From: Octopus sinensis
Taxonomy: Eukaryota
NCBI RefSeq assembly: GCF_006345805.1
Contig: NC_043014.1
Location: 44,144,001 to 44,208,000, forward strand
Direction of reading: 5' to 3'
DNA length: 64,000 nt
Position 1 is the stretch's first letter. Each line of letters opens with the position of its first letter. A program made the translations under genes and the position numbers. Under the pieces are notes generated by a model. That model was not told the origin of the DNA. It saw only the letters and a program-made list of their open reading frames with translations, and ran no database searches. Shown here piece by piece: positions 1-59,818 of this stretch.

Positions 1-908
1 CCTCGGTCAAGACCGAGGGCTGGAGAGGAGTAACAGTAGAGCTGAACGTGCAGGCGGAGAGCGAGGTACTGGCGGACCTGGCGGAGAGCATTAAATTGGG
101 AGACGTGATTATGAGAGTGTGAGTGGAGGGCAGAGCTCCATGTTGTTACAAGTGTGGCCTGAGGGGCCACATAAGAGCCTTCTGCCCTCCCCCACCAAGA
201 GAAAAGGAAATCGTTGAGGAAACTCTAAAAGAGGAGGCCCCAAAAGAAGAAGAAATGAAAAAGAAGCAGACGGAAAGGGAAACGACAGAGGAGGAGGAGA
301 TGCAAAAAGAGTGTGAGGAGGGCAGAAAGAAGAAAAAAGGAAAGAAAAGGAAAAACTGTGCGAAGCCCCAACCCACCCCAACACCACCCACACCCTTGGA
401 GACCCATCCTGCCCCCGCAAACAGCAATCCCACCCACTCCCCGCCTACAAGAAAAACGAAAACAGACACACAGAACATACAAAAGCCCCAGTCCTACTTT
501 TTATGTGTTGTGAGGAAGGGGGATACCGAGAACGCAAGAAAGCTTTTTGAAGACAATGTATGGCAGGAGTATGAGGACGGAAGTTATGCGGTGTTCGATT
601 TTGAACTCATGGGCTCTTTGATGAGCAAGTGCAATGAACTACGTATAAATTGTTTTTCAGAATACATGAAGGATGATATGATAGAGAGGTATGAGAGAGA
701 AATGAAAGGTGAGGTGAAAGACTTTGGAATCGTGATAGGAAACGGAAAGGTAAGTGATGCTGGCGGAGGGGGCCGTTAGCATCGCTTTCATGTTATCATT
801 TTTTCATTTTAACATTTCATTTAATCATAATTTTAATCGCATTGTTTTATGTCCCCCATGTTTTGTAATGTTCCCTCTTCGTGGCCCCTAGTGGGTAATA
901 AAGAAATA
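1..908 (+). mobile_element. ORF1-only LINE-like element, subfamily A, copy 1 (runs off the left edge; nonsense codon TGA at 120-122)
   Basis: Near-identical to 1486-2388. Encodes a CCHC knuckle (CYKCGLRGHIRAFC). The stop at 779 is followed by a ~130-bp UTR ending in the tail GCCCCTAGTGGGTAATAAAGAAATA. Confidence 0.8.
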
Positions 909-2388
909 GGATATTTGAGAACTTGTCGGAGACATCGAACTCTGAAGACGAGCAAACCGGTGATGTAAATAATGTGGAGATAAAAAATAGGAAAACGTAC
1001 GCAGGAGTTGCAAAAAAGAAGACGGCACAGGAAAAGGAAATAAACCTAGAAAAATTGCCAGGTTTCCAGAGGTATATGAGGAAGGACAGCGGCGAGGTGG
1101 AACTGGAACCACCGCCAAAGAGAAAGGAATGGTACGATAAAAGGACCATTATTTACAGGGTGTTCGCAAACGAAAGAAAGAAAATAGAAGTTGTAAACAT
1201 GGAGTGGATAGAGGAGGCCCTGAGAAGATCGGAGGAGGAAATCATTTTTCTGACTCGAGGATCGAAGTACGGTACGGTAGTGGTACATTTTAAAAGTGAG
1301 ACTGCAGCGAGGAAGATGGCGGCGAAGGCGGTGAAGTCAGAAAAGGTAACACTTTTACCTATGTATTTGAATAGAAGGATTACACGAGTGAGGGTGGAGG
1401 GAGTGCCACCAAACGTTGAGGCAGAGTGGATTGTGGCGGCTGTGATCAGCGGCCACGAGGAGGAAGTGGATATTCTCCATGCCTCGGTCAAGACCGAGGG
1501 CTGGAGAGGCGTAACAGTGGAGCTGAACGTGCAGGCAGAAAACGAGGTACTGGTGGACCTGGTGGAAAGCATCAGATTGGGAGACGTGATTATGAGAGTG
1601 TGGATGGAGGGCAGAGCTCCACGTTGTTACAAGTGTGGCCTGAGGGGCCACATAAGAGCCTTCTGCCCTCCCCCACCAAGAGAAAAGGAAATCGTTGAGG
1701 AAGCTCCAAAAGAGGAGGCCCCAAAAGAGGAAGAAATTAAAGAGAAGCAGACGGAAAGGGAAACGACAGAGGAGGAGGAGATGCAAAAAGAGTGGGAGGA
1801 GGGCAGAAAGAAGAGAAAAGGAAAGAAAAGGAAAAACTGTGCGAAGCCCCAACCCACCCCAACACCACCCACACCCTTGGAGACCCATCCTGCCCCTGCA
1901 AACAGCGATTCCACCCACTCCCCGCCTACAAGAAAAACGAAAACAGACACACAGAACATACAAAAGCCCCAGTCCTACTTTTTATGTGTTGTGAGGAAGG
2001 GGGATACCGAGGACGCAAGAAGGATTTTTGAGGACGATGTATGGCAAGAGTATGAAGACGGTAGCTACGCGGTGTTCGATTTTGAACTTATGGGCTCTTT
2101 GATGAGCAAGTGTAATGAATTGCGTATAAATTGTTTGTCAGCGTATATGAAGGATGATATGATAGAGAGGTATGAAAGAGAAATGAAGGGTGAGGTAAAA
2201 GAGTTTGGAATTGTGATAGGAAACGGAAAGGTAAGTGATGCTGGCGGAGGGGGCCGTTAGCATCGCTTTCATATTATCATTTTTTCATTTTAACATTCAT
2301 TTACTCATAATTTTAATCACATTGTTTTGTATCCCCCATGTCTTGTAATGTTCCCTCTTCGTAGCCCCTAGTGGGTAATAAAGAAATA
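909..2388 (+). mobile_element. ORF1-only LINE-like element, subfamily A, copy 2
   Basis: One long Gag-like ORF, then the same short UTR and tail as copy 1. No EN/RT coding sequence and no LTRs. Confidence 0.8.
923..2260 (+). CDS. LINE ORF1p-like nucleic-acid-binding protein (RRM-like region, single CCHC zinc knuckle, E/K-rich and P/T-rich linker), 445 aa
   Basis: Open frame with CX2CX4HX4C. Begins at TTG, so the true start is probably lost; the first ATG is at 1076. Homologous to 44285-45385 and to the disrupted ORF at 54208-55494. Confidence 0.75.
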   Translation: MSETSNSEDEQTGDVNNVEIKNRKTYAGVAKKKTAQEKEINLEKLPGFQRYMRKDSGEVELEPPPKRKEWYDKRTIIYRVFANERKKIEVVNMEWIEEALRRSEEEIIFLTRGSKYGTVVVHFKSETAARKMAAKAVKSEKVTLLPMYLNRRITRVRVEGVPPNVEAEWIVAAVISGHEEEVDILHASVKTEGWRGVTVELNVQAENEVLVDLVESIRLGDVIMRVWMEGRAPRCYKCGLRGHIRAFCPPPPREKEIVEEAPKEEAPKEEEIKEKQTERETTEEEEMQKEWEEGRKKRKGKKRKNCAKPQPTPTPPTPLETHPAPANSDSTHSPPTRKTKTDTQNIQKPQSYFLCVVRKGDTEDARRIFEDDVWQEYEDGSYAVFDFELMGSLMSKCNELRINCLSAYMKDDMIERYEREMKGEVKEFGIVIGNGKVSDAGGGGR

Positions 2389-2425
2389 GAAATCAGAAAT
2401 CAGAGAAAAAAATTTTCCATGTAAG

Positions 2426-3682
2426 ATGGCATCCAATCAGCAAGAGAACGATACGTACGTAGAATTGGTAGCGTATTTGGAAGAACAGAACGGTACACAC
2501 GAAGCATTAATGGTGTGTCCGGATGAAACTAGCCTTTTAGACGACGATGAGTGCGAATCAGCAACGGCGGATTCGGAAGAAAATAGCGACATATTCGAAT
2601 TGTTGATGGAAGATTCGGTAGAAGAGACCCACACATACGAAACAGTAATGGCAGATTCGGAAGAAAAGAGCGTTTTAGACGACGATGTCTGCGAATCAGC
2701 AACGGCGGATTTGGGAAAAAAGAGCCTTTTAGACAGTGAAGTATACGAACCATCAAATGCGGATTCGGAAGAAAATAGCCACATATACGGATCGTTGATG
2801 GTAGATTCGGTAGAAAAGACCCATACATATGAAACAGTAATGGCAAATTCGGAAGAAGAGAGTCATACCTACGAAAACTTAAGGGTGGATTCGAAAGAAG
2901 AGAGCCATACCTACGAAAAATTAAGGGCGGATTCGGAAGGAGAGAGCCATACCTACGAAGAAATAATGCCGGATTCGGAAGGAGATAGCCATATCTACGA
3001 AGAAATAATGCCGGATTCGGAAGGAGATAGCCATATCTACGAAACATTAAGGGCGGATTCAGAAGGAGAGAGCCTTTCCCTCGAAATAATAACTGATTCG
3101 GAAAAAACGGAAGAAACAGATGGCAATAATTCTGTAGACGATTCGACAAATGTTCCGATACTAACCACAGAAGAATCAAGGACAACACGTCGTTTGTCAC
3201 ATTCTTCTACTTCTAGCAACGCGGAAAACGAAGAAACGACCGCACTCGGACGATTTGGGCAACATCAAAATCAACATCACACGACCATCTCTTTTGATAT
3301 GCACTGGCTGTTTATACTTGCTTGTCTGGTGTCGAGTTCAGTCAATTTATCCTGCAGTTTTACATATCTGTTGCTACTGCTTCGCAAATATTCAATTGCA
3401 TCAGATTATTGGAGTGTTGTTCTGAACACGATTACGTTATTCAGCTCGTCCATAATCTTCTGCATCTTTTCCCCAATTTGGAAGCGAAAGTTAGTTTTTC
3501 CGAATAGAACTATCGGCTACAGTCTCATATATACGACCCTCAATCTCGTGTCTGCTGTCATTATCATCAATTTACGTTACACTCGGATCACCCTCGCCAT
3601 TTTTATAAGCAGTATCTTGCTGTCTGTCCTGTTATTTGTACAGAGAATCAGATTAAGATTTACAGCTTTAGAAAACCTGTAA
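2426..3682 (+). CDS. Tetraspan family paralogue G1 (418 aa): long acidic N-tail with 14-aa Tyr repeats, four C-terminal TM helices
   Basis: ATG-to-stop ORF. Four hydrophobic segments with the family motifs HWLFIL..SLSCS, WKRK..FPNR and LNLVSAVII. RRLS motif precedes TM1. Confidence 0.85.
   Translation: MASNQQENDTYVELVAYLEEQNGTHEALMVCPDETSLLDDDECESATADSEENSDIFELLMEDSVEETHTYETVMADSEEKSVLDDDVCESATADLGKKSLLDSEVYEPSNADSEENSHIYGSLMVDSVEKTHTYETVMANSEEESHTYENLRVDSKEESHTYEKLRADSEGESHTYEEIMPDSEGDSHIYEEIMPDSEGDSHIYETLRADSEGESLSLEIITDSEKTEETDGNNSVDDSTNVPILTTEESRTTRRLSHSSTSSNAENEETTALGRFGQHQNQHHTTISFDMHWLFILACLVSSSVNLSCSFTYLLLLLRKYSIASDYWSVVLNTITLFSSSIIFCIFSPIWKRKLVFPNRTIGYSLIYTTLNLVSAVIIINLRYTRITLAIFISSILLSVLLFVQRIRLRFTALENL
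2560..3100 (+). repeat. Coding 42-bp (14-aa) tandem repeat in G1
   Basis: Units such as GCGGATTCGGAAGGAGAGAGCCATACCTACGAAGAAATAATG. The Tyr codons at 2786 and 3038 are exactly 6x42 bp apart. Confidence 0.9.
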
Positions 3683-3844: not shown

Positions 3845-4250
3845 ATTCTTTCAGTTGTACTTTCAGTAGTTTTAACCCCTTTTCAATAGTTTTAACCCTT
3901 TTTCAATAGTTTTAACCCTTTTTTCAATAGTCTTAACCCTTTTGAGGAGTTTTAACTCTTTTCAAGAGTTTTAACCCTTTTCAATAGTTTTAACCCTTTT
4001 CAATAGTTTTAACCCCTTTCAGTAGTTTTAACCCCTTTCAGTAGTTTTAACCCCTTTCAGTAGTTTTAACCCCTTTCAGTAGTTTTAACCCTTTTCAATA
4101 GTTTTAACCCTTTTGAGTAGTTTTAACCCTTTTGATTAGTTTTAACCCTTTTTGAGTCGTTTTAACCCCTTTCAGTAGTTTTAACCTTTTTGAGTAGTTT
4201 TAACCCTTTTTCAATAGTTTTAACCTTTTTGAGTAGTTTTAACCCTTTCA
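3845..4250. repeat. ~20-bp minisatellite (AGTAGTTTTAACCCCTTTC-like), about 20 units
   Basis: Direct reading of tandem units. Confidence 0.9.
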
Positions 4251-10320: not shown

Positions 10321-10450
10321 AAAATATCAAACAAATAGCGGTTTGAACAGTAAAATAGAGTACCACAATATCAGTATGAGCGGCAAATAGTGTTCATATA
10401 TTTCTAATAGTATTTTGAAGCACAAATGAAATTTGATAATGTCACCTCTG

Positions 10451-10706
10451 GAATTGAAACCGCGCGTGGATTTAAATGATCTACCTGCAACATGTAATTG
10501 ACTAGGAGGGGAAAAAGTGAGGGTGGTTTGATGGAATAGTTTATTTAAGGTAATTTTTTTTTAAATCAACACAAAGTATTTTTTAAAATTTCTATTGTTT
10601 CCTAGACAATAAATATACAAAATGGCGAATTGTTAAGAATTCAAAGAGCGGAATTTTTTATGTTAGTTAAACTTCAAATCGGCAAAAGTTTACATCTCCA
10701 GAAAGA
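10451..10706 (+). promoter_or_regulatory. Conserved upstream block of the tetraspan family (G2 copy)
   Basis: GAATTGAAACCGC...TGCA(T/A)..GATGGAATAGTTTATTTAAGG...TTTCTATTGTTTC..AGACAATAAATA. It recurs before G3 (19457), G4 (23281), G5 (25046), G6 (32827), G8 (49005), G7 (45498, minus) and G9 (59778, minus). Function is inferred. Confidence 0.7.
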
Positions 10707-11321
10707 ATGGCGGATTCGGAATTAATGGAAAATCCTGAAAGAACTAATGGAGATAATGTGGATTATGTGAACAATGATCCAAGTAGGGGCAATTTAATAC
10801 AACCATCGAATCCTTCGAGGCCAACACGTCGTCAGTCACTTGCTTCCAGCGTTAGCAATGAGGAAAATATAGAAATGATCGCACTTGGAGCAGCTCGGCA
10901 ACCTGAACTCCGCGATCAACAGCAGAACCAGAGACACACTATTAATGATTTCACTATGCGCTGGAGCCATAAATTCATCTACCTGGTGTTATCATTTATT
11001 AGTTTATTCATCAGTATGATAGATCTGTTGAAAAGAACTCGCAATTTTTCAGCTGTGTTAGACTATTTGAATATTTTTCTCGACGTGGTTATAACAGCCA
11101 ACTCGTTGATAATTTTGTGTGTCGTCTTTCAATTTTTCAAGCGAAGAGCTGAGTTCACAAATCGCTCTGTCTTTGTATGTCTCCTATGTGCCGTATGTAA
11201 CCTGTTATCTGCCACAATTATGTACTACTTACACCATGAAGGGATGACCCTGGTCGTTCTTATCACCACTTTCATACTTTTGCTTCTGTTGTATGTACCA
11301 TGGTTGATGTCGCGTTTGTAA
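10707..11321 (+). CDS. Tetraspan family paralogue G2 (204 aa)
   Basis: MADSE start, RPTRRQSL..EENIEMIALG, four TM segments, KRR.EF.NR loop. Confidence 0.85.
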   Translation: MADSELMENPERTNGDNVDYVNNDPSRGNLIQPSNPSRPTRRQSLASSVSNEENIEMIALGAARQPELRDQQQNQRHTINDFTMRWSHKFIYLVLSFISLFISMIDLLKRTRNFSAVLDYLNIFLDVVITANSLIILCVVFQFFKRRAEFTNRSVFVCLLCAVCNLLSATIMYYLHHEGMTLVVLITTFILLLLLYVPWLMSRL

Positions 11322-12429: not shown

Positions 12430-13130
12430 CTCTTCCATTTGTTTCTTCGATAATACAGTAGATAGGATAAAAATTAGTCAACATTGCTTCTGAAGGAGAT
12501 TTTTCTGTCACCTGGCATCATATCAGCAATAGTGATGATTTCATCAGAAATAACTGATTCCGTAGAGACTTATAGCTTCAAGAATATTTTAAGTATTTGC
12601 AATTTGCTACGAACATAGAATGGGTCCTAGTCGAAACTTCGGCCGTCGCCGGATCCCCAAACTTGTTCCAAAGAAGAATACAGAGATACGGCCGAACAAA
12701 GAGGATCCCAATATCCGAACCGTCTGCATACTACCGAATAGCCACCGCCAAGACCAGGTCTTGACTACTGCTGCCACCCTGCTCAATACCTCCGTCCAAT
12801 TCTTCTCTCTCTGGAGGCCTGGTCCAAACCAAACTCCTAGCAACTTAACCGGTCCCTCCATCCAGCGCCCAACAACGCTGTCTGAAGGCATCGACTTGTC
12901 AACCCAGGTGCCGAGCTACTGCTAACTCGATTTTCTGTATAATTTTCCCGTTTTTGAAACCATGATCGGTATACTCAACTCGATCTCACGTCCTCTGTAT
13001 TGTGTGTGATTTATTTAAACTGTTGTCCGTTACTCTTACATCTTCGGTTTACAATAAGAATAAATAATAGTAACCTTGTGTGTACCGAGGTCTATGATGA
13101 CTTCTGCATTCTTCAACTGTCTATACTCAA
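12430..13130 (+). pseudogene. Degenerate tetraspan paralogue interrupted by a LINE fragment
   Basis: Homologous to 5880-7790. GCTAACTCGATTTTCTGTATAATTTTCCCG (TM2) and TGTACCGAGG (C-terminus) are recognisable but frameshifted. Confidence 0.6.
12616..12920 (-). mobile_element. L1/Tx1-like LINE ORF2 fragment
   Basis: Near-identical to 8840-9030 (GPVKLLGVWFGPGLQREKNW). Confidence 0.85.
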
Positions 13131-19196: not shown

Positions 19197-19723
19197 GGGT
19201 TATGACCATTACTCTCCTACTAAGCCATAAAAAAAAACTGAAGCGAACTGTTTCCAAACAAGAATTGAAACCAGGAAGCGTTTGCAGCTTTTCACGACTT
19301 CACCTTATTCTCAGCAAATCTCAACACATTTATGATATTGATTTTGGTGTTTAAAAACACATTCTTTTTATAAGAAAGGGAAACTGGAAAGATATAGTGT
19401 TCGTATATTTTAAACGACATCTTGAAGTGAAAGTGATGTTTGATGGCATCAACTAAGAATTGAAACCGCATCGTAGATGAGAATGTACTGCATGCAAAAC
19501 ATTGTGATTGATTAAAGGAAAAAAAAAAAACGTACGTTGAAATTATGGAATTACACATTTAAGGCCATTTTTTAAAATCAGAACAAAGATTTGCTTAATT
19601 TTTATTGTTTCTTAGAGAATAAATAGAAAAAACATGGTGAGGTACTAAAATTTTAAGGAAAGGAAACATTTCAATGTTAGCTGGCTTCGAATAAGAAAAA
19701 AAAAGAATTTATCTCACGGAAGA

Positions 19724-22805: not shown

Positions 22806-23270
22806 AAATGAAGTTTGATAGCTGACTTCTTATTACCCACAAGGGGCCAACAAAGAGGGGACAATACAATCTGATTTTGGGGTTAGATGAGCGAATGATT
22901 ATACAAAAAGATGACATTAAAATTTTTACAAAATTAAGAAAGTATAATGAAATCGAAATGAAGTTTGATAGCTGATTTTTTATTGCCCACAAGGGGCCAA
23001 AAAAAAGGGGACAATACAATTTGATTTTGGGGTCAGATGAGCGAATGATTATACAAAAAGATGACATTAAAATTTTTACAAAATTAAGAAAATATAATGA
23101 AATCGAAATGAAGTTTGATAGCTGATTTTTTATTGCCCACAAGGGGCCAACAAAGAGGGGACAATACAATCTGATTTTGGGGTCAGATGAGCGAATGATT
23201 ATACAAAAAGATGGCATTAAAATATTTACAAAATTAAGAAATATAATAAAATCGAAATGAAGTTTGATAG
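22806..23270 (-). repeat. Three tandem 150-bp units, each a LINE-type 3' tail plus a 16-bp host duplication
   Basis: Units start at 22806, 22956, 23106 and 23255 with AAATGAAGTTTGATAG. Each contains the reverse complement of the GCCCCTTGTGGG(T/C)AATAA tail. Confidence 0.85.
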
Positions 23271-23524
23271 CGTCGATTAAGAATTGAAACCGCACGCGCA
23301 TGCAAATAGCTGTTGATTGACCAAAAGAAAAAAATTGTTGGCATGATGGAATAGTTTATTTAAGGGCACTCTTTAAAATCGATGCAAGGTGTTTTCATAA
23401 TTTCTATTGTTTCCGAGACAATAAATACTAAATATGGTGAATTGATAAAAATTCAGAGAGAGGACATTTTTTTTTACGTTCGTTAGCTTCAAATCGACGA
23501 AAGAAGATTACATCTCAAGAAAGA

Positions 23525-24490: not shown

Positions 24491-25356
24491 ATTTGCCCAA
24501 GTCTCGTATTTTCCGCTTTTCTGTAGTAGATAGTTTCACGAAATATTTTTCGACAGACTAATTATCTATCTATTTTTTTTCCTCTCCCCCTTTTTTCTTC
24601 TTTTTTCATTTTTCTTTTTTCCCTTTTTTCTTTTTCTTTTTTTTTGTTCTTTTTTCCCATTTACGATCCCTTTTGATCGAAAACCTACGCCACCTTTCTT
24701 TTTTCTTTTTTTCTCCCCCAAAAGAAAAGCTCTACCTTGTAACTTGTCCCATCTGTGTGCAGCCCTGTGTGGCCAATAAAGAAACTTATCTATCTATCTA
24801 TCTTACTATCTATCTATCTGTTTTACTATATCTATCTATCTATCTGTTTGACTATATTGATCTGTCTGTCATGTCTGTTTGTTTGACTATACCTATATAT
24901 ATATATAATATATATCCATCTGACTGGATATGACTAAGAATAGAGATTTCTTTTTGTTTTTTTTTTATAAGAGCGACTAGGAGGTGGTAGAGACCATATA
25001 TTTCCAATAACATTTTGATGCCCTTAAGAAGATTTATAACGTTAAGAATTGAAACCGCGCGTAGATTAGAATGATCTGCATGCAAGAAAACTTTGACAGA
25101 GAGGAAAAAACTGAAGTTGAAATGATGGAATAGTTTATTTAAGGTTTATTTAAAATCAACGCGAAGTATTTTTTCTGAATTTCTATTGTTTTCTAGACAA
25201 AATTCTGTCATATGTATGACAAAGTTTTTTACTAACTGGCTCACTACAAGCACTGGCCTTTCTACTAAACTACGGTTAAATACTAGAATTGATCAATTGT
25301 TTATAATGCGGGGAGAGGAAATTTTTTTTTATGTCAGTTAAACTTCAAATTTTCAA

Positions 25357-26624: not shown

Positions 26625-27400
26625 ATAGCTCCACGTTGTTACAAGTGTGGCCTGAGGGGTCACATAAGAGCCTTCTGCCCTCCCCCAGGGAAAGAAATGG
26701 ATTCCGAACCACAGAGAGAGAAGCAGAAACCAGAGGAGAAGGAGACAGTAGAAGAGAATTCACAGAAATGGAAAGAAGCTGGAAATAAGAGGAAGAGAAG
26801 AATACGAGGAAAAGAAAATAACATAGAACACCAATCCACCCCAACACCACCCACACCCTCTGAGACCCACCCTATCCCTGCAGACAGTGAACCCGCCCGC
26901 TCCCCTCCAACAAGAAAACAAAAGAAAAAAAAATAATACAGACAGACAAGAGTTTGAAATCGAACCCAGGCCGAACATTTATATTATGACTGAACAGAAA
27001 GAAGTTAAAAGGGTAATGGAAGAGCATAAATGGTATGAAATAGGTGAGACCAGATATGCAGTGCTGGAAAAGAATATAGATGAGTTTGTGTTGAGGTGTG
27101 AAAGGGAGAATTGGGAGGTGAAAGATACAAGAATGAGCGATGAATTCGTGGAAAATATGGAGGAGTATTTCGGAGTAAGAATGGATATGGATGGTCTTCG
27201 TATTGGGAATGAACATTCAGGTGACAGTGAAAACAAAAGGACAGGTAAGTGATGCTGGCGGAGGGGGCCGTTAGCATCGCTTTCATATTATCATTTTTTC
27301 ATCTTAATATTCATTTGCTCATAAATTTAATCATATTGTTCTATGTCCCCCATGTTTTGTTATGTACGCCAGTCTTCGTAGCCCCTGGTGGGTAATAAAG
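26625..27400 (+). mobile_element. ORF1-only element, subfamily B, 5'-truncated and frameshifted, joined to a SINE head at 26544
   Basis: APRCYKCGLRGHIRAFCPPP knuckle and a P/T-rich linker. The 3' end GTAAGTGATGCTGGCGGAGGGGGCCGTTAGCATCGC and the tail are shared with subfamily A. Confidence 0.75.
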
Positions 27401-32812: not shown

Positions 32813-33062
32813 ACAAAATCAACTAAGAATTGAAACCGCGTCATAGATGAGAACGTACTGCTTGCAAAGCAATGAGATTGAATTTTTAAAATCCGTTGAT
32901 ATTATGGAATAGTTCATTTAAGGTCAGAACAAAGATTTGTTTCGTTCCTATTGTTTCTTACAGAATAAATACAAAACATGGTAGAAAGAAGAAGAAAAAA
33001 AAAAAAAAAAACATCGCGTCTTAGCTTCGAGTCAGCAGAAGAACAATTTATCTCACGAGAGG

Positions 33063-33647
33063 ATGGCAGGTTCGGAAAGGGTTGAAGAAAATACTGACGG
33101 AGATTGTCCTGCGGATAAATTGGAAAATGCTACGACTACAGGAGATTCGATACCAACAAGCAGTTCGTCAATTACTTCTTCTAGCAGCACCGACGAAAAC
33201 GAAGAACTTACGCAACTAATGGCGGAATCTTGGGAAAATCAGAACCAACGTCACACGGTCAGGTATTCTGATATACACTGGCTGTTTATACTCACCTGCC
33301 TGGTATTGAGTTCGATTAGTTTGTCCTGCAGCATTACATACCAGTTGCAACCCGTTCGCAAGTCTACAAATCTATCGGACCATTGGGATTTAATTCTAGA
33401 CGCGATTATAATCGGCAACTCGTTGGTAGTCTTGGGTGTCTTTTTCCCGATTTGGAAGCAAAGATTGGTTTTCCCAAACCGCACTCTCGTCTACTGTCTC
33501 TTCTGTACCATATTTAACATGTTGTCTGCTGCCATTATTTTCGGTTTACATTATGACCGGAATATACTTGCTATTCTTGTCAGTAATGTCATCCTTTATA
33601 TTCTATTGTATGCACAGGACACCAAGTTGAGATGTATAGCACCTTAA
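33063..33647 (+). CDS. Tetraspan family paralogue G6 (194 aa)
   Basis: IHWLFILTCLVLSSISLSCSI, GNSLVVL, WKQRLVFPNRTLVYCLFC. Lacks the RRLS motif. Confidence 0.8.
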   Translation: MAGSERVEENTDGDCPADKLENATTTGDSIPTSSSSITSSSSTDENEELTQLMAESWENQNQRHTVRYSDIHWLFILTCLVLSSISLSCSITYQLQPVRKSTNLSDHWDLILDAIIIGNSLVVLGVFFPIWKQRLVFPNRTLVYCLFCTIFNMLSAAIIFGLHYDRNILAILVSNVILYILLYAQDTKLRCIAP

Positions 33648-42958: not shown

Positions 42959-44071
42959 TTAAACAGCTGAAAAATTCGTAACCAACCTCGGTGCACACAA
43001 CAGAATCAACAGTATGGCACTACCGATTAAAACGGACAGAATAATCCAGTCATAATGTATATAAATGATTATGCTAGCAGACAACACACTAAGTGTGGCA
43101 CATAGGATGCAGTGAGCATATCTTATTTTCGAGATACCTGGGGTTGGTTTCGAAAACGGATAGACGAAGCAGAGAACTGCCAACGAGTTGGCGCCAATAA
43201 CGGCGTGCAGAACAATTGTCCAGTACTCTGCAGTGTCTAGATTAGACTTTGCAAGCTGCACTAAACACATGATACTGGAATATAAACAAAATAACGACAG
43301 CAGTATGTAGCTGAACATCAAGAAACCGGGCAAACGATAATAAGTGGTAGTGTGTTGTTGGTTTTGTTGATGCTGCGGTTGTTGTTGTTCTTGTTGCTGT
43401 TGTTCTTGTTGTTGTTGTTGCTGTTGTTGAGATCCTCCCGGCGTGGTCGTTTCTAGGTTTTCATCGATGGAAGTTAGTGATAGGCGACGTGTTGTCCTCG
43501 ATTCATTCGATGGCCGTAGCAAATTGTCCATATTTATATAATTATTCCTAGCTTCATTTGATGTCTGTAGCGAACTGTCCATATCTAGATAATTACCCCT
43601 AGCTTCATTCGATGTCTGTAGCGAACTGTCCACAACTAGATAATTACCCCTCGCTTCATTCGATGTCCGTAACGAATTGTCCATATCTAGATAATCACTG
43701 CCCGATTCATTTGATGTCAGTCGCGAATTGTCCATATCTAGATAATCACTGCCCGATTCATTCGATCTCCGTAGCGAATTGTCCATAATTAGATAATTAC
43801 TCGTAGAACTATCTGCATAATTATCTTCATCATCCGTATAATTATCTTCATTATCTGCAGAACTACCTCCGTTGTCCACAAAACTACTTTCGTTGTCCAC
43901 AGAACTACCTTCGTTGTCCACAGAAATACCTTCGTTGTCCACAGAAATACCTTCGTTGTCCACAGAATTAACTGGATTAGTTCTTTCCGGGTTCTCCATT
44001 ATTTCTTCGTATATATTTTCCGTTTGCTGGTTTTCTTCGTATACATCGTCCATTTGCTGATTTGAAGCCAT
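42959..44071 (-). CDS. Tetraspan family paralogue G7 (370 aa from MASNQQ): 7-aa and 17-aa repeats with YxxM motifs, poly-Q, four TM segments
   Basis: The ATG at 44071 aligns with the G1 start. RTTRRLSL..ENLETT precedes TM1; YWTIVLHAVIGANSL and HCILCATLSVLSASII follow. Confidence 0.85.
   Translation of the reverse strand: MASNQQMDDVYEENQQTENIYEEIMENPERTNPVNSVDNEGISVDNEGISVDNEGSSVDNESSFVDNGGSSADNEDNYTDDEDNYADSSTSNYLIMDNSLRRSNESGSDYLDMDNSRLTSNESGSDYLDMDNSLRTSNEARGNYLVVDSSLQTSNEARGNYLDMDSSLQTSNEARNNYINMDNLLRPSNESRTTRRLSLTSIDENLETTTPGGSQQQQQQQQEQQQQEQQQPQHQQNQQHTTTYYRLPGFLMFSYILLSLFCLYSSIMCLVQLAKSNLDTAEYWTIVLHAVIGANSLAVLCFVYPFSKPTPGISKIRYAHCILCATLSVLSASIIIYIHYDWIILSVLIGSAILLILLCAPRLVTNFSAV
43500..43970 (-). 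repeat. Coding 51-bp (17-aa) and 21-bp (7-aa) tandem repeats in G7
   Basis: SNESGSDYLDMDNSRLT-type units (six Tyr) and SVDNEGI-type units. Confidence 0.9.
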
Positions 44072-44156: not shown

Positions 44157-45388
44157 TATTTCTTTATTACCCACTAGGGGCCACGAAGAGGGAACATTAC
44201 AAAACATGGGAGACACAAAACAATGCGATTAAAATTATGAATAAATGAATGTTAAAATGAAAAAATGATCACATGAAAGCGATGCTAACGGCCCCCTCCG
44301 CCAGCATCACTTACCTTTCCGTTTCCTATCACGATTCCAAAGTCTTTCACCTCACCTTTCATTTCTCTTTCATACCTCTCTATCATATCATCCTTCATAT
44401 ATGCTGAAAAACAATTTATACGTAGTTCATTACACTTGCTCATCAAAGAGCCCATAAGTTCAAAATCGAACACCGCATAGCTACCGTCTTCATACTCTTG
44501 CCATACATTGTCTTCAAAAAGCCTTCTTGCGTTCTCGGTATCCCCCTTCCTCACAACACATAAAAAGTAGGACTGGGGCTTTTGTATGTTCTGTGTGTCT
44601 GTTTTCGTTTTTCTTGTAGGCGGGGAGTGGGTGGTATTGCTGTTTGCAGGGGCAGGATGGGTCTCCAAGGGTGTGGGTGGTGTTGGGGTGGGTTGGGGCT
44701 TCGCACAGTTTTTCCTTTTCTTTCCTTTTCTCTTCTTTCTGCCCTCCTCACACTCTTTTTGCATCTCCTCCTCCTCTGTCGTTTCCCTTTCCGTCTGCTT
44801 CTCTTTAATTTCTTCCTCTTTTGGGGCCTCCTCTTTTGGAGCTTCCTCAACGATTTCCTTTTCTCTTGGTGGGGGAGGGCAGAAGGCTCTTATGTGGCCC
44901 CTCAGGCCACACTTGTAACAACGTGGAGCTCTGCCCTCCACCCACACTCTCATAATCACGTCTCCCAATTTAATGCTTTCCGCCAGGTCCACCAGCACCT
45001 CGTTCTCCGCCTGCACGTTCAGCTCCACTGTTACGCCTCTCCAGCCCTCGGTCTTGACCGAGGCATGGAGAATATCCACTTTCTCCTCGTGGCCGCTGAT
45101 CACAGCCGCCACAATCCACTCAGCCTCAACGTTTGGTGGCACTCCCTCCACCCTTACTCGTGTAATCCTTCTATTCAAGTACATTGATAAAAGTGTTACC
45201 TTTTCTGACTTCACTGTCTTCACCGCCATCTTCCTCGCTGCAGTCTCACTTTTAAAATGTACCACTACAGTACCGTGCTTCGATCCTCGAGTCAGAAAAA
45301 TGATTTCCTCCTCCGATCTTCTCAGGGCTTCCTCTATCCATTCCAAATTTACAACCTCTATTTTCTTTCTTTCGTTCGCGAACACCCT
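44157..45388 (-). mobile_element. ORF1-only element, subfamily A, copy 3 (5'-truncated) inside the G7 upstream block
   Basis: Closely similar to 1157-2388. The host block ...GATGGAATAGTTTATTTAAG lies immediately 5' of it. Confidence 0.85.
44285..45385 (-). CDS. ORF1p-like zinc-knuckle protein, 5'-truncated but otherwise open
   Basis: 366-aa open frame nearly identical to the ORF at 923-2260. Confidence 0.7.
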   Translation of the reverse strand: MFANERKKIEVVNLEWIEEALRRSEEEIIFLTRGSKHGTVVVHFKSETAARKMAVKTVKSEKVTLLSMYLNRRITRVRVEGVPPNVEAEWIVAAVISGHEEKVDILHASVKTEGWRGVTVELNVQAENEVLVDLAESIKLGDVIMRVWVEGRAPRCYKCGLRGHIRAFCPPPPREKEIVEEAPKEEAPKEEEIKEKQTERETTEEEEMQKECEEGRKKRKGKKRKNCAKPQPTPTPPTPLETHPAPANSNTTHSPPTRKTKTDTQNIQKPQSYFLCVVRKGDTENARRLFEDNVWQEYEDGSYAVFDFELMGSLMSKCNELRINCFSAYMKDDMIERYEREMKGEVKDFGIVIGNGKVSDAGGGGR

Positions 45389-45540
45389 TAATCTTAAATA
45401 AACTATTCCATCGTTTCGTCTTGGGTCTTTCTATTTTCTTTGGTCGATCAAAATTTCATGAATGCAGATCATTGTAAGCTACGAAACGGTTTCAATTCAT
45501 AGCTAACGTTATCAAATTGCTTCTAATGTCAATGTTTCTT

Positions 45541-48702: not shown

Positions 48703-49254
48703 CGAGCGATTACTGTTTCAATCTCACTCTGAGATTTAATTATGCTTAATAAAATAATGTTACTCTTTTACTAAGCCATAAAACATGACATGAAATGTTT
48801 CCAGTCTTGAAATTGAAACCAGGAGGTGTTTGCCGCTTGTCACGACTTTGCCTTTTGCTCTGCAACTCTCAAAAACATTTATAATATTGATTCTTGTGCC
48901 TAAGAACACAGACTTTATTAAGAAAGGGAAAGTGAGAGGATGTAGTGTTTATATATTTCAAACGGCATCTTGAAGCGTAAGTGAAGTTTGATATCGTCAA
49001 CAAAGAACTGAAACCGTATCGTGGATTTGAATGATTTGCATGCAAGAAATTTTGATTAATTAATGAAAATAAAAAAGATGAAAGTCGAAACTGATGGAAG
49101 AGTTTATTTAAGGTCACTTTTTTTTTTAATACAAGGCGAAATACAGTTGCATTTTAATCGTTTCTTCAGCAATAAATCCTAAACATGATGAAGTGTTGCT
49201 ATTTCGGAGAGAGGAAATTTTTCATGTAAGTTGGCTTCAAATCGGCAAAAGAAT

Positions 49255-50196
49255 ATGTCCCAAGAAATAATGGAGGGTTCAGAAAGAATAGAAGACTTTG
49301 AAAGAACAGATGATTCCGAAAGACTAGACGGTTCTGAACGGCTAGAAGGCGCTGAACGGCTGGAAGGTGCTGAACGGCTAGAAGACGCTGAGCGACTGGA
49401 AGGCGCTGAGCGACTGGAAGGCGCTGAGCGGCTGGAAGGCGGTGAACGGCTAGAAGGCGGTGAACGGCTAGAAGGCGGTGAACGGCTAGAAGGCGGTGAA
49501 CGGTTAGAAGACGCTGAACGGTTAGAAGACGCTGAACGGTTAGAAGACGCTGAACGGCTAGAAGGCGCTGAACTACTAGATTATTATGAAAGAATGGGAT
49601 ATTTTGGAACAATGGTGGATTCTGAAACAACTGATGGAGATGACCCTATGGATATTTTGAGCTTTGATCCAACTCGGAACCATATAATAATATACCCAGG
49701 GGATAGGAGGCCAATACGTCGTTCGTCATTTTCTTCCTATCTCGGTAGTGAGGAAAACATAGAAATGACTGCGCCAGGAGAATCTCCACAAAACCAACAA
49801 CAAAATAACAAGTATTCTAATCTCCACTGGCTCTATATAGTCGGTTATTTAGTGTTGGGTTTGGTCTGTCTATCCTGTGGCATTGTATATCTGTTGCAAA
49901 TCGTTCGCAATTTTAAAAATATGACTGAGATTTGGAGTTTTATTCTCGACATAGTTATATTGTGCAACTCGTTGGCAATCCTCTTCATTGTTTTCCCGGC
50001 TTCCAAGCGAAGAACGGTTTTCCCAAATCGCTCTCTTGTCCACTGTCTCCTATGTACTTTATTCAACCTGGTGTCTTCAACCATAATCTTCTATTATCAT
50101 TACGATTGGATAATGTCGGTTGTTCTTGTCAGTAGTATCATACTTTTGGTTCTGTTTACTCTACCGGGCACAAGATCGAATTTTACAGTGCTTTAA
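49255..50196 (+). CDS. Tetraspan family paralogue G8 (313 aa from the first ATG; frame open from 49231) with ERLEG(A/G) hexapeptide repeats
   Basis: RPIRRSSF..EENIEMTAPG, LHWLYIV, CNSLAIL, KRRTVFPNRSLVHCLLCTLFNLVSSTII. Confidence 0.85.
   Translation: MSQEIMEGSERIEDFERTDDSERLDGSERLEGAERLEGAERLEDAERLEGAERLEGAERLEGGERLEGGERLEGGERLEGGERLEDAERLEDAERLEDAERLEGAELLDYYERMGYFGTMVDSETTDGDDPMDILSFDPTRNHIIIYPGDRRPIRRSSFSSYLGSEENIEMTAPGESPQNQQQNNKYSNLHWLYIVGYLVLGLVCLSCGIVYLLQIVRNFKNMTEIWSFILDIVILCNSLAILFIVFPASKRRTVFPNRSLVHCLLCTLFNLVSSTIIFYYHYDWIMSVVLVSSIILLVLFTLPGTRSNFTVL
49300..49575 (+). repeat. Coding 18-bp tandem repeat (about 15 units) in G8
   Basis: GAACGGCTAGAAGGCGCT-type units. Confidence 0.92.
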
Positions 50197-59496: not shown

Positions 59497-59818
59497 ACTT
59501 CTTTTGTCAACTCTAGACCAACTTACACGAAAAAAATGAAATTGCCTCAGTCCGAAATCTGTTGATACTGTTCTGGCATCGTTTTGCATATATCCCCTCA
59601 AAAAACAATGGAAATTATGCAAATACTCACATGACCTTTTCTTTCTTTTTTTCTTGTTCAAAAAAGTTATATGAAATGAACTCCTCCGCCGTTTCACCTT
59701 TCGTATTATTAGTATTTTCTTTAGTCGTCCACAAATCCCTGCATGCAGGTAATTCTAATCTGCGACGCGGGTTCAATTCTTGGTGGAAACCATCAAACAT
59801 CGCGAAGTATTTTAACAC

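What the first reader, a model, noticed from the sequence alone, without database searches (positions are those of the whole stretch)
2560..3100. G1 tail is a ladder of seven evenly spaced YxxL/I/V motifs (YEEI-type, ITAM-like)
Seen in sequence: YGSL, YETV, YENL, YEKL, YEEI, YEEI and YETL at exact 14-aa spacing in an acidic context. Each unit starts with (M)ADSE, so the repeat is an amplified copy of the family's own start segment. Established knowledge: pYEEI is the optimal Src-family SH2 ligand, YxN suits Grb2, and YxxL/I-x10-YxxL/I resembles a long-spacer ITAM. Inference: repeat expansion turned a short tail into a multivalent phosphotyrosine scaffold. YxxPhi endocytic signals are the alternative reading.
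Basis: partly seen in the sequence, partly recalled or inferred. Interest (0 to 1): 0.78.

Follow-up and report, generated by a model that had tools for sequence, protein, structure and literature searches.

The report
Repeat-born tyrosine ladder, octopus membrane protein
An octopus-only four-pass membrane protein has a long acidic tail in which a young 42-base repeat copied one tyrosine motif seven times; the pattern is real and could be a docking array for signalling proteins, but no sequence evidence shows it is used that way.

Summary
ORF 2426-3682 (+), 418 aa, has Tyr at residues 121, 135, 149, 163, 177, 191 and 205, spaced exactly 14 aa apart, each in a Y-x-x-L/I/V context. The cause is an in-frame 42-bp tandem repeat. 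The window is Octopus (vulgaris complex). G1 is one of nine clustered paralogues of an uncharacterised family found only in octopods, with a disordered acidic N-tail and four TM helices. It has no Pfam, PDB-sequence or fold match. However:
- The ladder is absent from the closest relative (58% identity in the TM domain).
- Units show no detectable purifying selection (pN/pS about 0.7).
- Edge units have lost the Tyr.
- Tyr is no better conserved than Ser3 or His8 of the unit.
- Sister tails carry unrelated, Tyr-free repeats.
- A repeat element separates G1 from the family's conserved upstream block.

In favour of use, a distant paralogue (G7) independently amplified a Y-x-x-M/V unit six times, and all five coding arrays have periods divisible by three. 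My verdict is a real, young, lineage-specific motif array that could serve for phosphotyrosine docking, with use unproven.

The parts
2426..3682 (+). G1 open reading frame, 418 aa plus stop: acidic tail followed by four TM helices
   Evidence: ATG sits at the family-conserved head position with A at -3 and G at +4.
2426..2566 (+). Non-repeated head (MASNQQ...), homologous to the head of G7 and to in-frame remnants upstream of the short paralogues; holds YVEL at aa 11
2567..2758 (+). Older, diverged repeat block: units of 14, 14, 18 and 18 aa (one Phe-for-Tyr unit, one YETV unit, two 18-aa variants)
2759..3052 (+). Core ladder: seven 42-bp units, each D/N-S-x3-S/T-H-x-Y-E/G-x-L/I/V-M/R
3053..3094 (+). 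Degenerate terminal unit; His and Tyr positions are both Leu
3188..3199 (+). R-R-L-S, a basophilic-kinase-type site conserved across the family (Ser invariant in the 9 paralogues)
3290..3676 (+). Four-helix TM domain (aa 289-417)
   Evidence: dN/dS is 0.38 against the closest relative.
910..2389 (+). Repeat element encoding a CCHC zinc-knuckle protein. It lies in tandem with a partial copy at 1-909 and ends 37 bp upstream of the G1 ATG.
42959..44071 (-). Paralogue G7. Its own 51-bp x6 array (43505-43810) gives six Y-L/I-x-M/V at 17-aa spacing, and a YEEI lies in its head.
49334..49573 (+). Paralogue G8 tail array, 18 bp x13.3 (ERLEGA units, no Tyr)

Best explanation
Shown: the ladder is the direct product of a young, in-frame 42-bp minisatellite, formed by slippage or unequal exchange, that amplified the N-terminal start segment of an octopod-restricted four-TM protein. 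The unit carries one Tyr with Glu at +1 and an aliphatic residue at +3, so each new copy adds one more Tyr motif at a fixed 14-aa step. Inferred: the array lies on a disordered, very acidic, cytoplasmic tail. N-tails in this family tolerate and repeatedly acquire in-frame repeats of unrelated content. I therefore read the ladder as a lineage-specific, weakly constrained by-product of a repeat-prone tail, not a conserved signalling module. By sequence it could act as a multi-site Src-type kinase substrate and SH2 docking array, and that is the most likely specific use if it has one. No sequence evidence shows it is used so.
For: The repeat is real and in frame. The tail has no predicted structure, with pLDDT below 50 over most of aa 22-288. 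Four TM helices are predicted, and the TM-domain model has pLDDT 84.7. Positive-inside count in the nine paralogues: loop 2 has 3.9 K+R against 0.3 D+E, and loop 3 has 0.4 against 0.8. This places the N-tail, loop 2 and the C-tail on the cytoplasmic side. A conserved R-R-x-S site and PPxY-type motifs in Argonauta homologues fit cytoplasmic tails. Tails expand freely: G7 carries 51-, 21- and 30-bp arrays and G8 an 18-bp array, and O. sinensis and O. bimaculoides members carry other Tyr-free repeats. The closest relative, P0007 (58% identity in the TM domain, reciprocal best), is 212 aa with no ladder. Pooled pN/pS among units is 0.70, and the three youngest junctions show 13 nonsynonymous and 0 synonymous changes. 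Ser3, His8 and Tyr10 are equally invariant in the core units, and edge units have Phe or Leu for Tyr. Variation at +3 (TTG, TTA, GTA, ATA) keeps T at the second codon position, and every codon with T there encodes a hydrophobic residue. Its hydrophobicity is therefore weak evidence of selection.
Against: Two of the most distant paralogues, G1 and G7 (27% identity in the TM domain), each amplified a unit holding Y-x-x-hydrophobic. YxxPhi motifs are otherwise rare in family tails: 0-2 per tail against 9 and 7. All five coding arrays have periods divisible by 3, and the older 14- and 18-aa units keep the frame, so the tail ORF is being maintained. The TM domain is under purifying selection (dN/dS 0.38), so G1 has been a working gene. 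With units this short and young, the selection tests have little power.
Confidence: 0.5

Rival explanations
1. One reading: the ladder is a selected multivalent phosphotyrosine scaffold. Membrane-proximal Src-family kinases phosphorylate the seven to nine Tyr. Src-type SH2 domains bind the YEEI units, a Grb2-type SH2 binds YENL, and tandem-SH2 Syk/Shark-type kinases bind neighbouring YxxL/I pairs.
For: The tail is cytoplasmic and disordered. Four overlapping neighbour pairs (aa 149/163, 163/177, 177/191, 191/205) fit YxxI/L-x6-12-YxxI/L as written for Draper. An invertebrate Src42A-Shark-ITAM pathway exists (PMC8092387). G7 carries an independent six-fold Y-x-x-M/V ladder. Acidic residues before the Tyr, Ile/Thr at -1 and Glu at +1 suit Src-type kinases (established knowledge, not tested here).
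Against: The ladder is absent from the closest relative. No purifying selection on the units is detectable. Tyr is not singled out among unit positions. The x10 spacer lies outside the classical x6-8. No expression or phosphorylation data were reachable. The family's conserved upstream block is not adjacent to G1, because a repeat element lies between.
Confidence: 0.25
2. The units are sorting signals. Each Y-x-x-hydrophobic motif would bind the mu subunit of an AP adaptor complex. The D-S-E-x-E/D stretch of each unit would act as a casein-kinase-2-type acidic cluster. Together they would drive endocytosis or endolysosomal targeting of the four-TM protein.
For: Each unit holds both a YxxPhi motif and a Ser with acidic residues at +1 and +3. 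The tail is cytoplasmic. Acidic surroundings of YxxPhi are typical of lysosome-directed signals, such as the C-terminal signal of the tetraspanin CD63 (established knowledge, not tested here).
Against: One signal is enough for sorting, and sevenfold repetition has no obvious gain. The motifs lie 80-180 residues from TM1, whereas lysosomal signals usually sit within about ten residues of the membrane (established knowledge). The same lack of conservation applies as for the scaffold reading.
Confidence: 0.12
3. G1 is silent or decaying, so the ladder has no effect. The repeat-element insertion cut the gene off from its promoter, and the repeat is expanding in an untranslated ORF.
For: The element ends 37 bp before the ATG. 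The roughly 250-bp upstream block conserved in G2-G9 and in L001 is missing between the element and G1. G1's Met at the short-paralogue start position is replaced by another residue, so only upstream ATGs can serve. G1's TM domain is more diverged from its closest relative (58%) than G6's or G8's are from theirs (71%).
Against: The 418-codon ORF is intact, with no stop or frameshift across about 670 nt of tail. All unit-length variants are multiples of 3. dN/dS is 0.38 in the TM domain. The ATG context is strong. G7 has the same kind of insertion with an intact ORF.
Confidence: 0.1

Closest known systems
ITAM-bearing signalling chains (CD3-zeta with three ITAMs; FcR-gamma; Draper/MEGF10 in invertebrate and vertebrate phagocytes)
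   Same: Repeated Y-x-x-L/I motifs in an acidic cytoplasmic segment. Neighbouring pairs fit the broad x6-12 pattern. In CD3-zeta the motif was likewise multiplied by internal duplication.
   Different: The spacer is x10, not the classical x6-8. It is a regular ladder, not discrete pairs. The protein has four TM helices and no ectodomain or known receptor partner. There is no homology, and phosphorylation is untested.
Transmembrane adaptor proteins (LAT, PAG/Cbp, NTAL, LIME) and multi-Tyr substrate domains such as the p130Cas YxxP array
   Same: No enzymatic domain, a membrane anchor, and a disordered cytoplasmic region with many Tyr motifs of defined SH2 classes. This is what G1 would work like if it is used.
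   Different: Those are single-pass or soluble proteins conserved across vertebrates. Their motifs are diverged, not a young minisatellite. No sequence relation was found.
MS4A family (CD20, Fc-epsilon-RI beta)
   Same: Small four-TM proteins with both termini cytoplasmic, encoded by tandem gene clusters. One member carries an ITAM-type motif in a tail.
   Different: No hit to the Pfam CD20 model or any other Pfam family. No PDB sequence hit. No significant fold match: best Foldseek E = 0.33, to GPCR fragments and generic helix bundles. The loops here are much shorter.
Tyrosine-phosphorylation repeat arrays of bacterial injected effectors (Helicobacter CagA, Chlamydia Tarp), named only
   Same: Tyr motifs multiplied by tandem repeat expansion, with copy number varying between lineages.
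   Different: Those are pathogen proteins acting in host cells; this is an endogenous animal membrane protein. No comparison was run.

Membership tests
ITAM | Two Y-x-x-L/I motifs | tested here: met
   Six of the seven ladder motifs end in L or I (one ends in V). Four overlapping neighbour pairs are L/I-L/I.
ITAM | Spacer of 6-8 residues between the motifs (classical), or 6-12 (broad) | tested here: inconclusive
   The spacer is exactly 10. This is outside 6-8 and inside the 6-12 used for Draper (PMC6219719).
ITAM | Cytoplasmic location | tested here: inconclusive
   Positive-inside counts place the N-tail inside. There is no N-terminal hydrophobic segment. This is a prediction only.
ITAM | Dual phosphorylation by a Src-family kinase and binding of a tandem-SH2 Syk-family kinase | not testable with these tools
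   No expression or phosphoproteome data were reachable.
YxxPhi adaptor-complex sorting signal | Y-x-x-bulky hydrophobic in a cytosolic, unstructured segment | tested here: met
   Nine such motifs lie in a tail with no predicted structure.
YxxPhi adaptor-complex sorting signal | Binding to a mu subunit and an effect on trafficking | not testable with these tools
   No data.
MS4A / CD20 | Match to the family profile or fold | tested here: not met
   No Pfam hit above noise, no PDB sequence hit, and no CD20 chain among the Foldseek matches listed (best 50 of 447).
Octopod four-TM orphan family (this cluster) | R-R-x-S site, N-I/L-E-M-T motif and four TM helices with a K/R-rich loop 2 | tested here: met
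   G1 aligns over all these features with eight window paralogues and 23 library representatives.

The most novel reading that the evidence does not exclude
Coding minisatellites in an octopod-only family of four-TM proteins are generating new membrane adaptors. G1 gained a seven-fold Src-type (Y-E-x-L/I) docking ladder. The distant paralogue G7 gained a six-fold Y-x-x-M/V ladder of a different SH2 class. On this reading the cluster is a natural series of de novo phosphotyrosine scaffolds with different readers.
Probability: 0.2. Interest if true: 0.7.

Novelty: new variant of a known kind. Interest (0 to 1): 0.38.

Why it matters
If the ladder is used, it would be a dated, traceable case of a multivalent phosphotyrosine docking site arising in one step from a 42-bp repeat. 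It would sit in a lineage-restricted gene family of an animal whose immune and neural signalling adaptors are almost unknown. If it is not used, it is a useful caution: textbook-perfect SH2 and ITAM-like patterns can arise for free from repeat expansion in disordered tails. Either way, the uncharacterised and under-annotated octopod four-TM family is worth recording. It has nine copies in 64 kb and only 23 representatives among 1.84 billion proteins.

Tried and rejected
- A whole-G1 protein search found nothing. Low-complexity words saturated the candidate list, and a true relative (P0007) appeared only when the TM part was searched alone.
- A family-profile word search returned only two Argonauta proteins, so the word index is poor for this family. 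The index-free HMMER search was the useful one.
- Exact look-ups of G1, G5 and G7 found no record. Absence of G1 from the collection therefore says nothing about its expression.
- Rfam and tRNA scans of the window were empty.
- The species of the Logan samples SRR11869385 and SRR11869394 could not be identified. Protein accession numbers occur in no held paper. A literature search for mollusc ITAM/Syk work returned only off-topic papers.
- The full-length AF2 model was too poor for a fold search (pLDDT 49). The TM-only model was good but matched nothing specific.
- The antisense ORF at 2529-3200 (-) was rejected as a by-product of the repeat.
- I considered a mini-intron that would join an upstream ATG to the conserved head. 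It fits G3 and only partly G2, G4 and G6, and stays unresolved.
- N-glycosylation sequons in loops 1 and 2 were rejected as topology markers, because both loops are too short.

Full report
**What is there**

The window is eukaryotic, about 38% GC. An Octopus vulgaris protein (CAI9737836.1) maps to it at 98-100% identity, so it comes from Octopus of the vulgaris complex.

The finding lies in ORF 2426-3682 (+), 418 aa, called G1 here. Translation gives Tyr at residues 121, 135, 149, 163, 177, 191 and 205, exactly 14 aa apart. The motifs are YGSL, YETV, YENL, YEKL, YEEI, YEEI and YETL. The cause is an in-frame 42-bp tandem repeat: TRF reports 2804-3074, 6.5 copies, 85% matches and no indels. In codon register the seven units occupy 2759-3052.

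- There is a further YETV at aa 71 and a YVEL at aa 11.
- An older repeat block at 2567-2758 has units of 14, 14, 18 and 18 aa.
- The edge units have Phe (first) or Leu (last, 3053-3094) in place of Tyr.

Shuffling the tail gives 2.1 YxxPhi motifs on average against 9 observed (P = 3e-5). The motifs are copies of one unit, though, not independent events.

**The protein and its family**

G1 has a 290-residue tail with 79 D+E against 14 K+R, followed by four hydrophobic helices. AlphaFold gives no structure for aa 22-288, with pLDDT below 50 over most of that stretch, and four helices at 289-417. A model of the TM domain alone, built from 30 family sequences, is confident (pLDDT 84.7) and shows an up-down four-helix bundle.

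Eight more paralogues lie in the window: at 10707, 19724, 23525, 25357, 33063, 42959 (-), 49231 and 58903 (-). A fragment lies at 12915-13037.

No known family matches:
- No Pfam family is matched.
- There is no PDB sequence hit.
- The fold search gives only generic helix bundles, best E = 0.33.

An index-free HMMER search of 1.84 billion representatives found 23 relatives. Those that carry names are from O. bimaculoides, O. sinensis, O. vulgaris and Argonauta hians; the rest are unnamed Logan assemblies. This is an uncharacterised family that appears limited to octopods.

**Topology**

In the nine paralogues, loop 2 carries 3.9 K+R and 0.3 D+E on average. Loop 3 carries 0.4 and 0.8, and loop 1 is mixed. 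By the positive-inside rule, loop 2, and with it the N- and C-termini, face the cytoplasm.

Other features agree with this:
- There is no N-terminal hydrophobic segment.
- A conserved R-R-x-S site precedes TM1.
- Argonauta homologues carry PPxY-type motifs in their tails.

This rests on prediction only.

**Origin of the unit**

The short paralogues start M-A/E-D/N/G-S-E/D, and G1's last degenerate unit aligns exactly there. Upstream of those starts, in frame, lies a remnant of the MASN(Q/R)Q head that G1 and G7 still begin with. In most short paralogues TTG, TTA or CTG stands where that ATG would be. The part of each G1 unit before the Met (S-H-x-Y-E-E-I-M) corresponds to that remnant, and to N-I-Y-E-E-I-M in G7's head. 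One refinement applies: the unit spans both sides of the short paralogues' start codon.

**Is the ladder under selection?**

Evidence against selection:
- Pooled pN/pS among ten units is 0.70. The three youngest junctions show 13 nonsynonymous and 0 synonymous changes.
- In the seven core units Ser3, His8 and Tyr10 are equally invariant, so Tyr is not singled out.
- The +3 residue varies among TTG, TTA, GTA and ATA. All keep T at the second codon position, and every such codon encodes a hydrophobic residue. Its hydrophobicity is therefore weak evidence.
- The closest relative, P0007, is 212 aa with no repeat and a single tail Tyr in no YxxPhi context. It comes from Logan samples of an unidentified octopod and is the reciprocal best match at 58% identity in the TM domain. 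Its dS to G1 (0.95) is twice that of the G8/L002 pair (0.43), so it may not be a strict orthologue.
- Family tails expand with unrelated content: ERLEGA x13 in G8, VDNEGxS x5 in G7, and Asp/Pro-rich and Asn/Gly-rich repeats in O. sinensis and O. bimaculoides members.
- The window is generally rich in minisatellites.

Evidence for selection or use:
- All five coding arrays have periods divisible by three (42, 51, 21, 30 and 18 bp). Most non-coding arrays do not.
- The older units keep the frame through 14- and 18-aa variants.
- The TM domain shows dN/dS of 0.38, so the ORF has been maintained.
- G7 is the paralogue most distant from G1 (27% identity). It independently amplified a 17-aa unit from a different tail segment, giving six Y-L/I-x-M/V motifs (pN/pS 1.28).
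- YxxPhi motifs are otherwise rare in family tails, 0-2 per tail.

**Expression doubt**

A repeat element encoding a CCHC zinc-knuckle protein has copies at 1-909, 910-2389 and 44157-45388 (-), 94-96% identical to each other. It ends 37 bp upstream of the G1 ATG and 86 bp upstream of the G7 ATG, in gene orientation. A roughly 250-bp upstream block is conserved in G2-G9 and in the relative's contig L001. In G7 the element separates this block from the gene, and for G1 the block is missing from the window. No transcript evidence was reachable.

**Comparison with known systems**

Neighbouring L/I pairs fit YxxI/L-x6-12-YxxI/L as used for Draper (PMC6219719), but not the classical x6-8. An invertebrate Src-Shark-ITAM pathway exists (PMC8092387). 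If used, G1 would work like a transmembrane adaptor or a multi-ITAM chain. It is not a member of any such family. The MS4A/CD20 analogy (four TM helices, clustered genes, one ITAM-type tail) fails the sequence and fold tests.

**Verdict**

The evolutionary part of the interpretation, a repeat of the start segment, is supported, and a cytoplasmic location is likely. A selected phosphotyrosine scaffold is possible but not shown.

My estimates for the competing readings:

| Reading | Estimate |
|---|---|
| Lineage-specific by-product of a repeat-prone tail, biochemically competent, use unproven | about 0.5 |
| Used phosphotyrosine scaffold | about 0.25 |
| Sorting signals | about 0.12 |
| Silent gene | about 0.1 |

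Noticed in passing
window 42959-44071 (-), arrays 43505-43810, 43858-43967, 44002-44063: Paralogue G7 has three separate in-frame arrays in its tail. The 51-bp array gives six Y-L/I-x-M/V motifs at 17-aa spacing, a second Tyr ladder of a different motif class. The unit derives from the segment just before the R-R-L-S site.
   Followed up: partly
window 49334-49573 (+): Paralogue G8 has an 18-bp x13.3 array encoding ERLEGA-type units with no Tyr. Its relative in another octopod (P0001 and P0024, 246 and 256 aa) has fewer units, so copy number varies between species and samples.
   Followed up: partly
window 1-909, 910-2389 (+), 44157-45388 (-): Copies of one repeat element with a CCHC zinc-knuckle ORF, 94-96% identical. 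They sit immediately upstream of the two paralogues that carry Tyr ladders (37 and 86 bp from the ATG), in the same orientation as the gene. Whether this is coincidence, a target preference or a promoter donation is unknown.
   Followed up: partly
window 10387-10688, 19250-19723, 23255-23524, 24996-25350, 32818-32982, 45393-45516, 48800-49254, 59660-59801; L001 540-776: A conserved upstream block of about 250 bp, plus a TATA-like AATAAATA about 65 bp before the ancestral ATG, is shared by the paralogues and by the relative's contig. It is probably the family's promoter.
   Followed up: partly
window 10674-10706, 19685-19723, 23483-23524, 33021-33062, 49231-49254: Short paralogues keep an in-frame remnant of the MASN(Q/R)Q head, most of them with TTG, TTA or CTG where G1 and G7 have ATG. 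G3, G4 and G6 also have ATG|GT about 55 nt upstream, and G3 and G6 an AG at or near the start of the head. This could be a mini-intron joining an upstream start codon. It is unresolved without transcript data.
   Followed up: partly
window 12915-13037 (+): An isolated fragment similar to residues 132-172 of the family (41% identity), probably a decayed tenth copy.
   Followed up: no
window 3861-4248: A 19-bp x20 minisatellite lies about 180 bp downstream of the G1 stop codon. The window holds about 15 strong tandem arrays in 64 kb, so the region is generally repeat-prone.
   Followed up: no
proteins P0013 and P0018 (Argonauta hians): Distant family members carry PPxY-type motifs in their N-tails. 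This suggests that tails in this family host different short linear motifs in different lineages.
   Followed up: no
window 2529-3200 (-): A 223-aa antisense ORF runs across the repeat. It is open only because the repeat unit lacks stops on that strand, and it is not a gene.
   Followed up: yes
window 27133-27243 and 33012-33263: The O. vulgaris gene model CAI9737836.1 joins a distant upstream exon to the start of G6 and then leaves the ORF before the TM domain. It is probably a mis-prediction. The family is largely unannotated in public octopus proteomes.
   Followed up: partly
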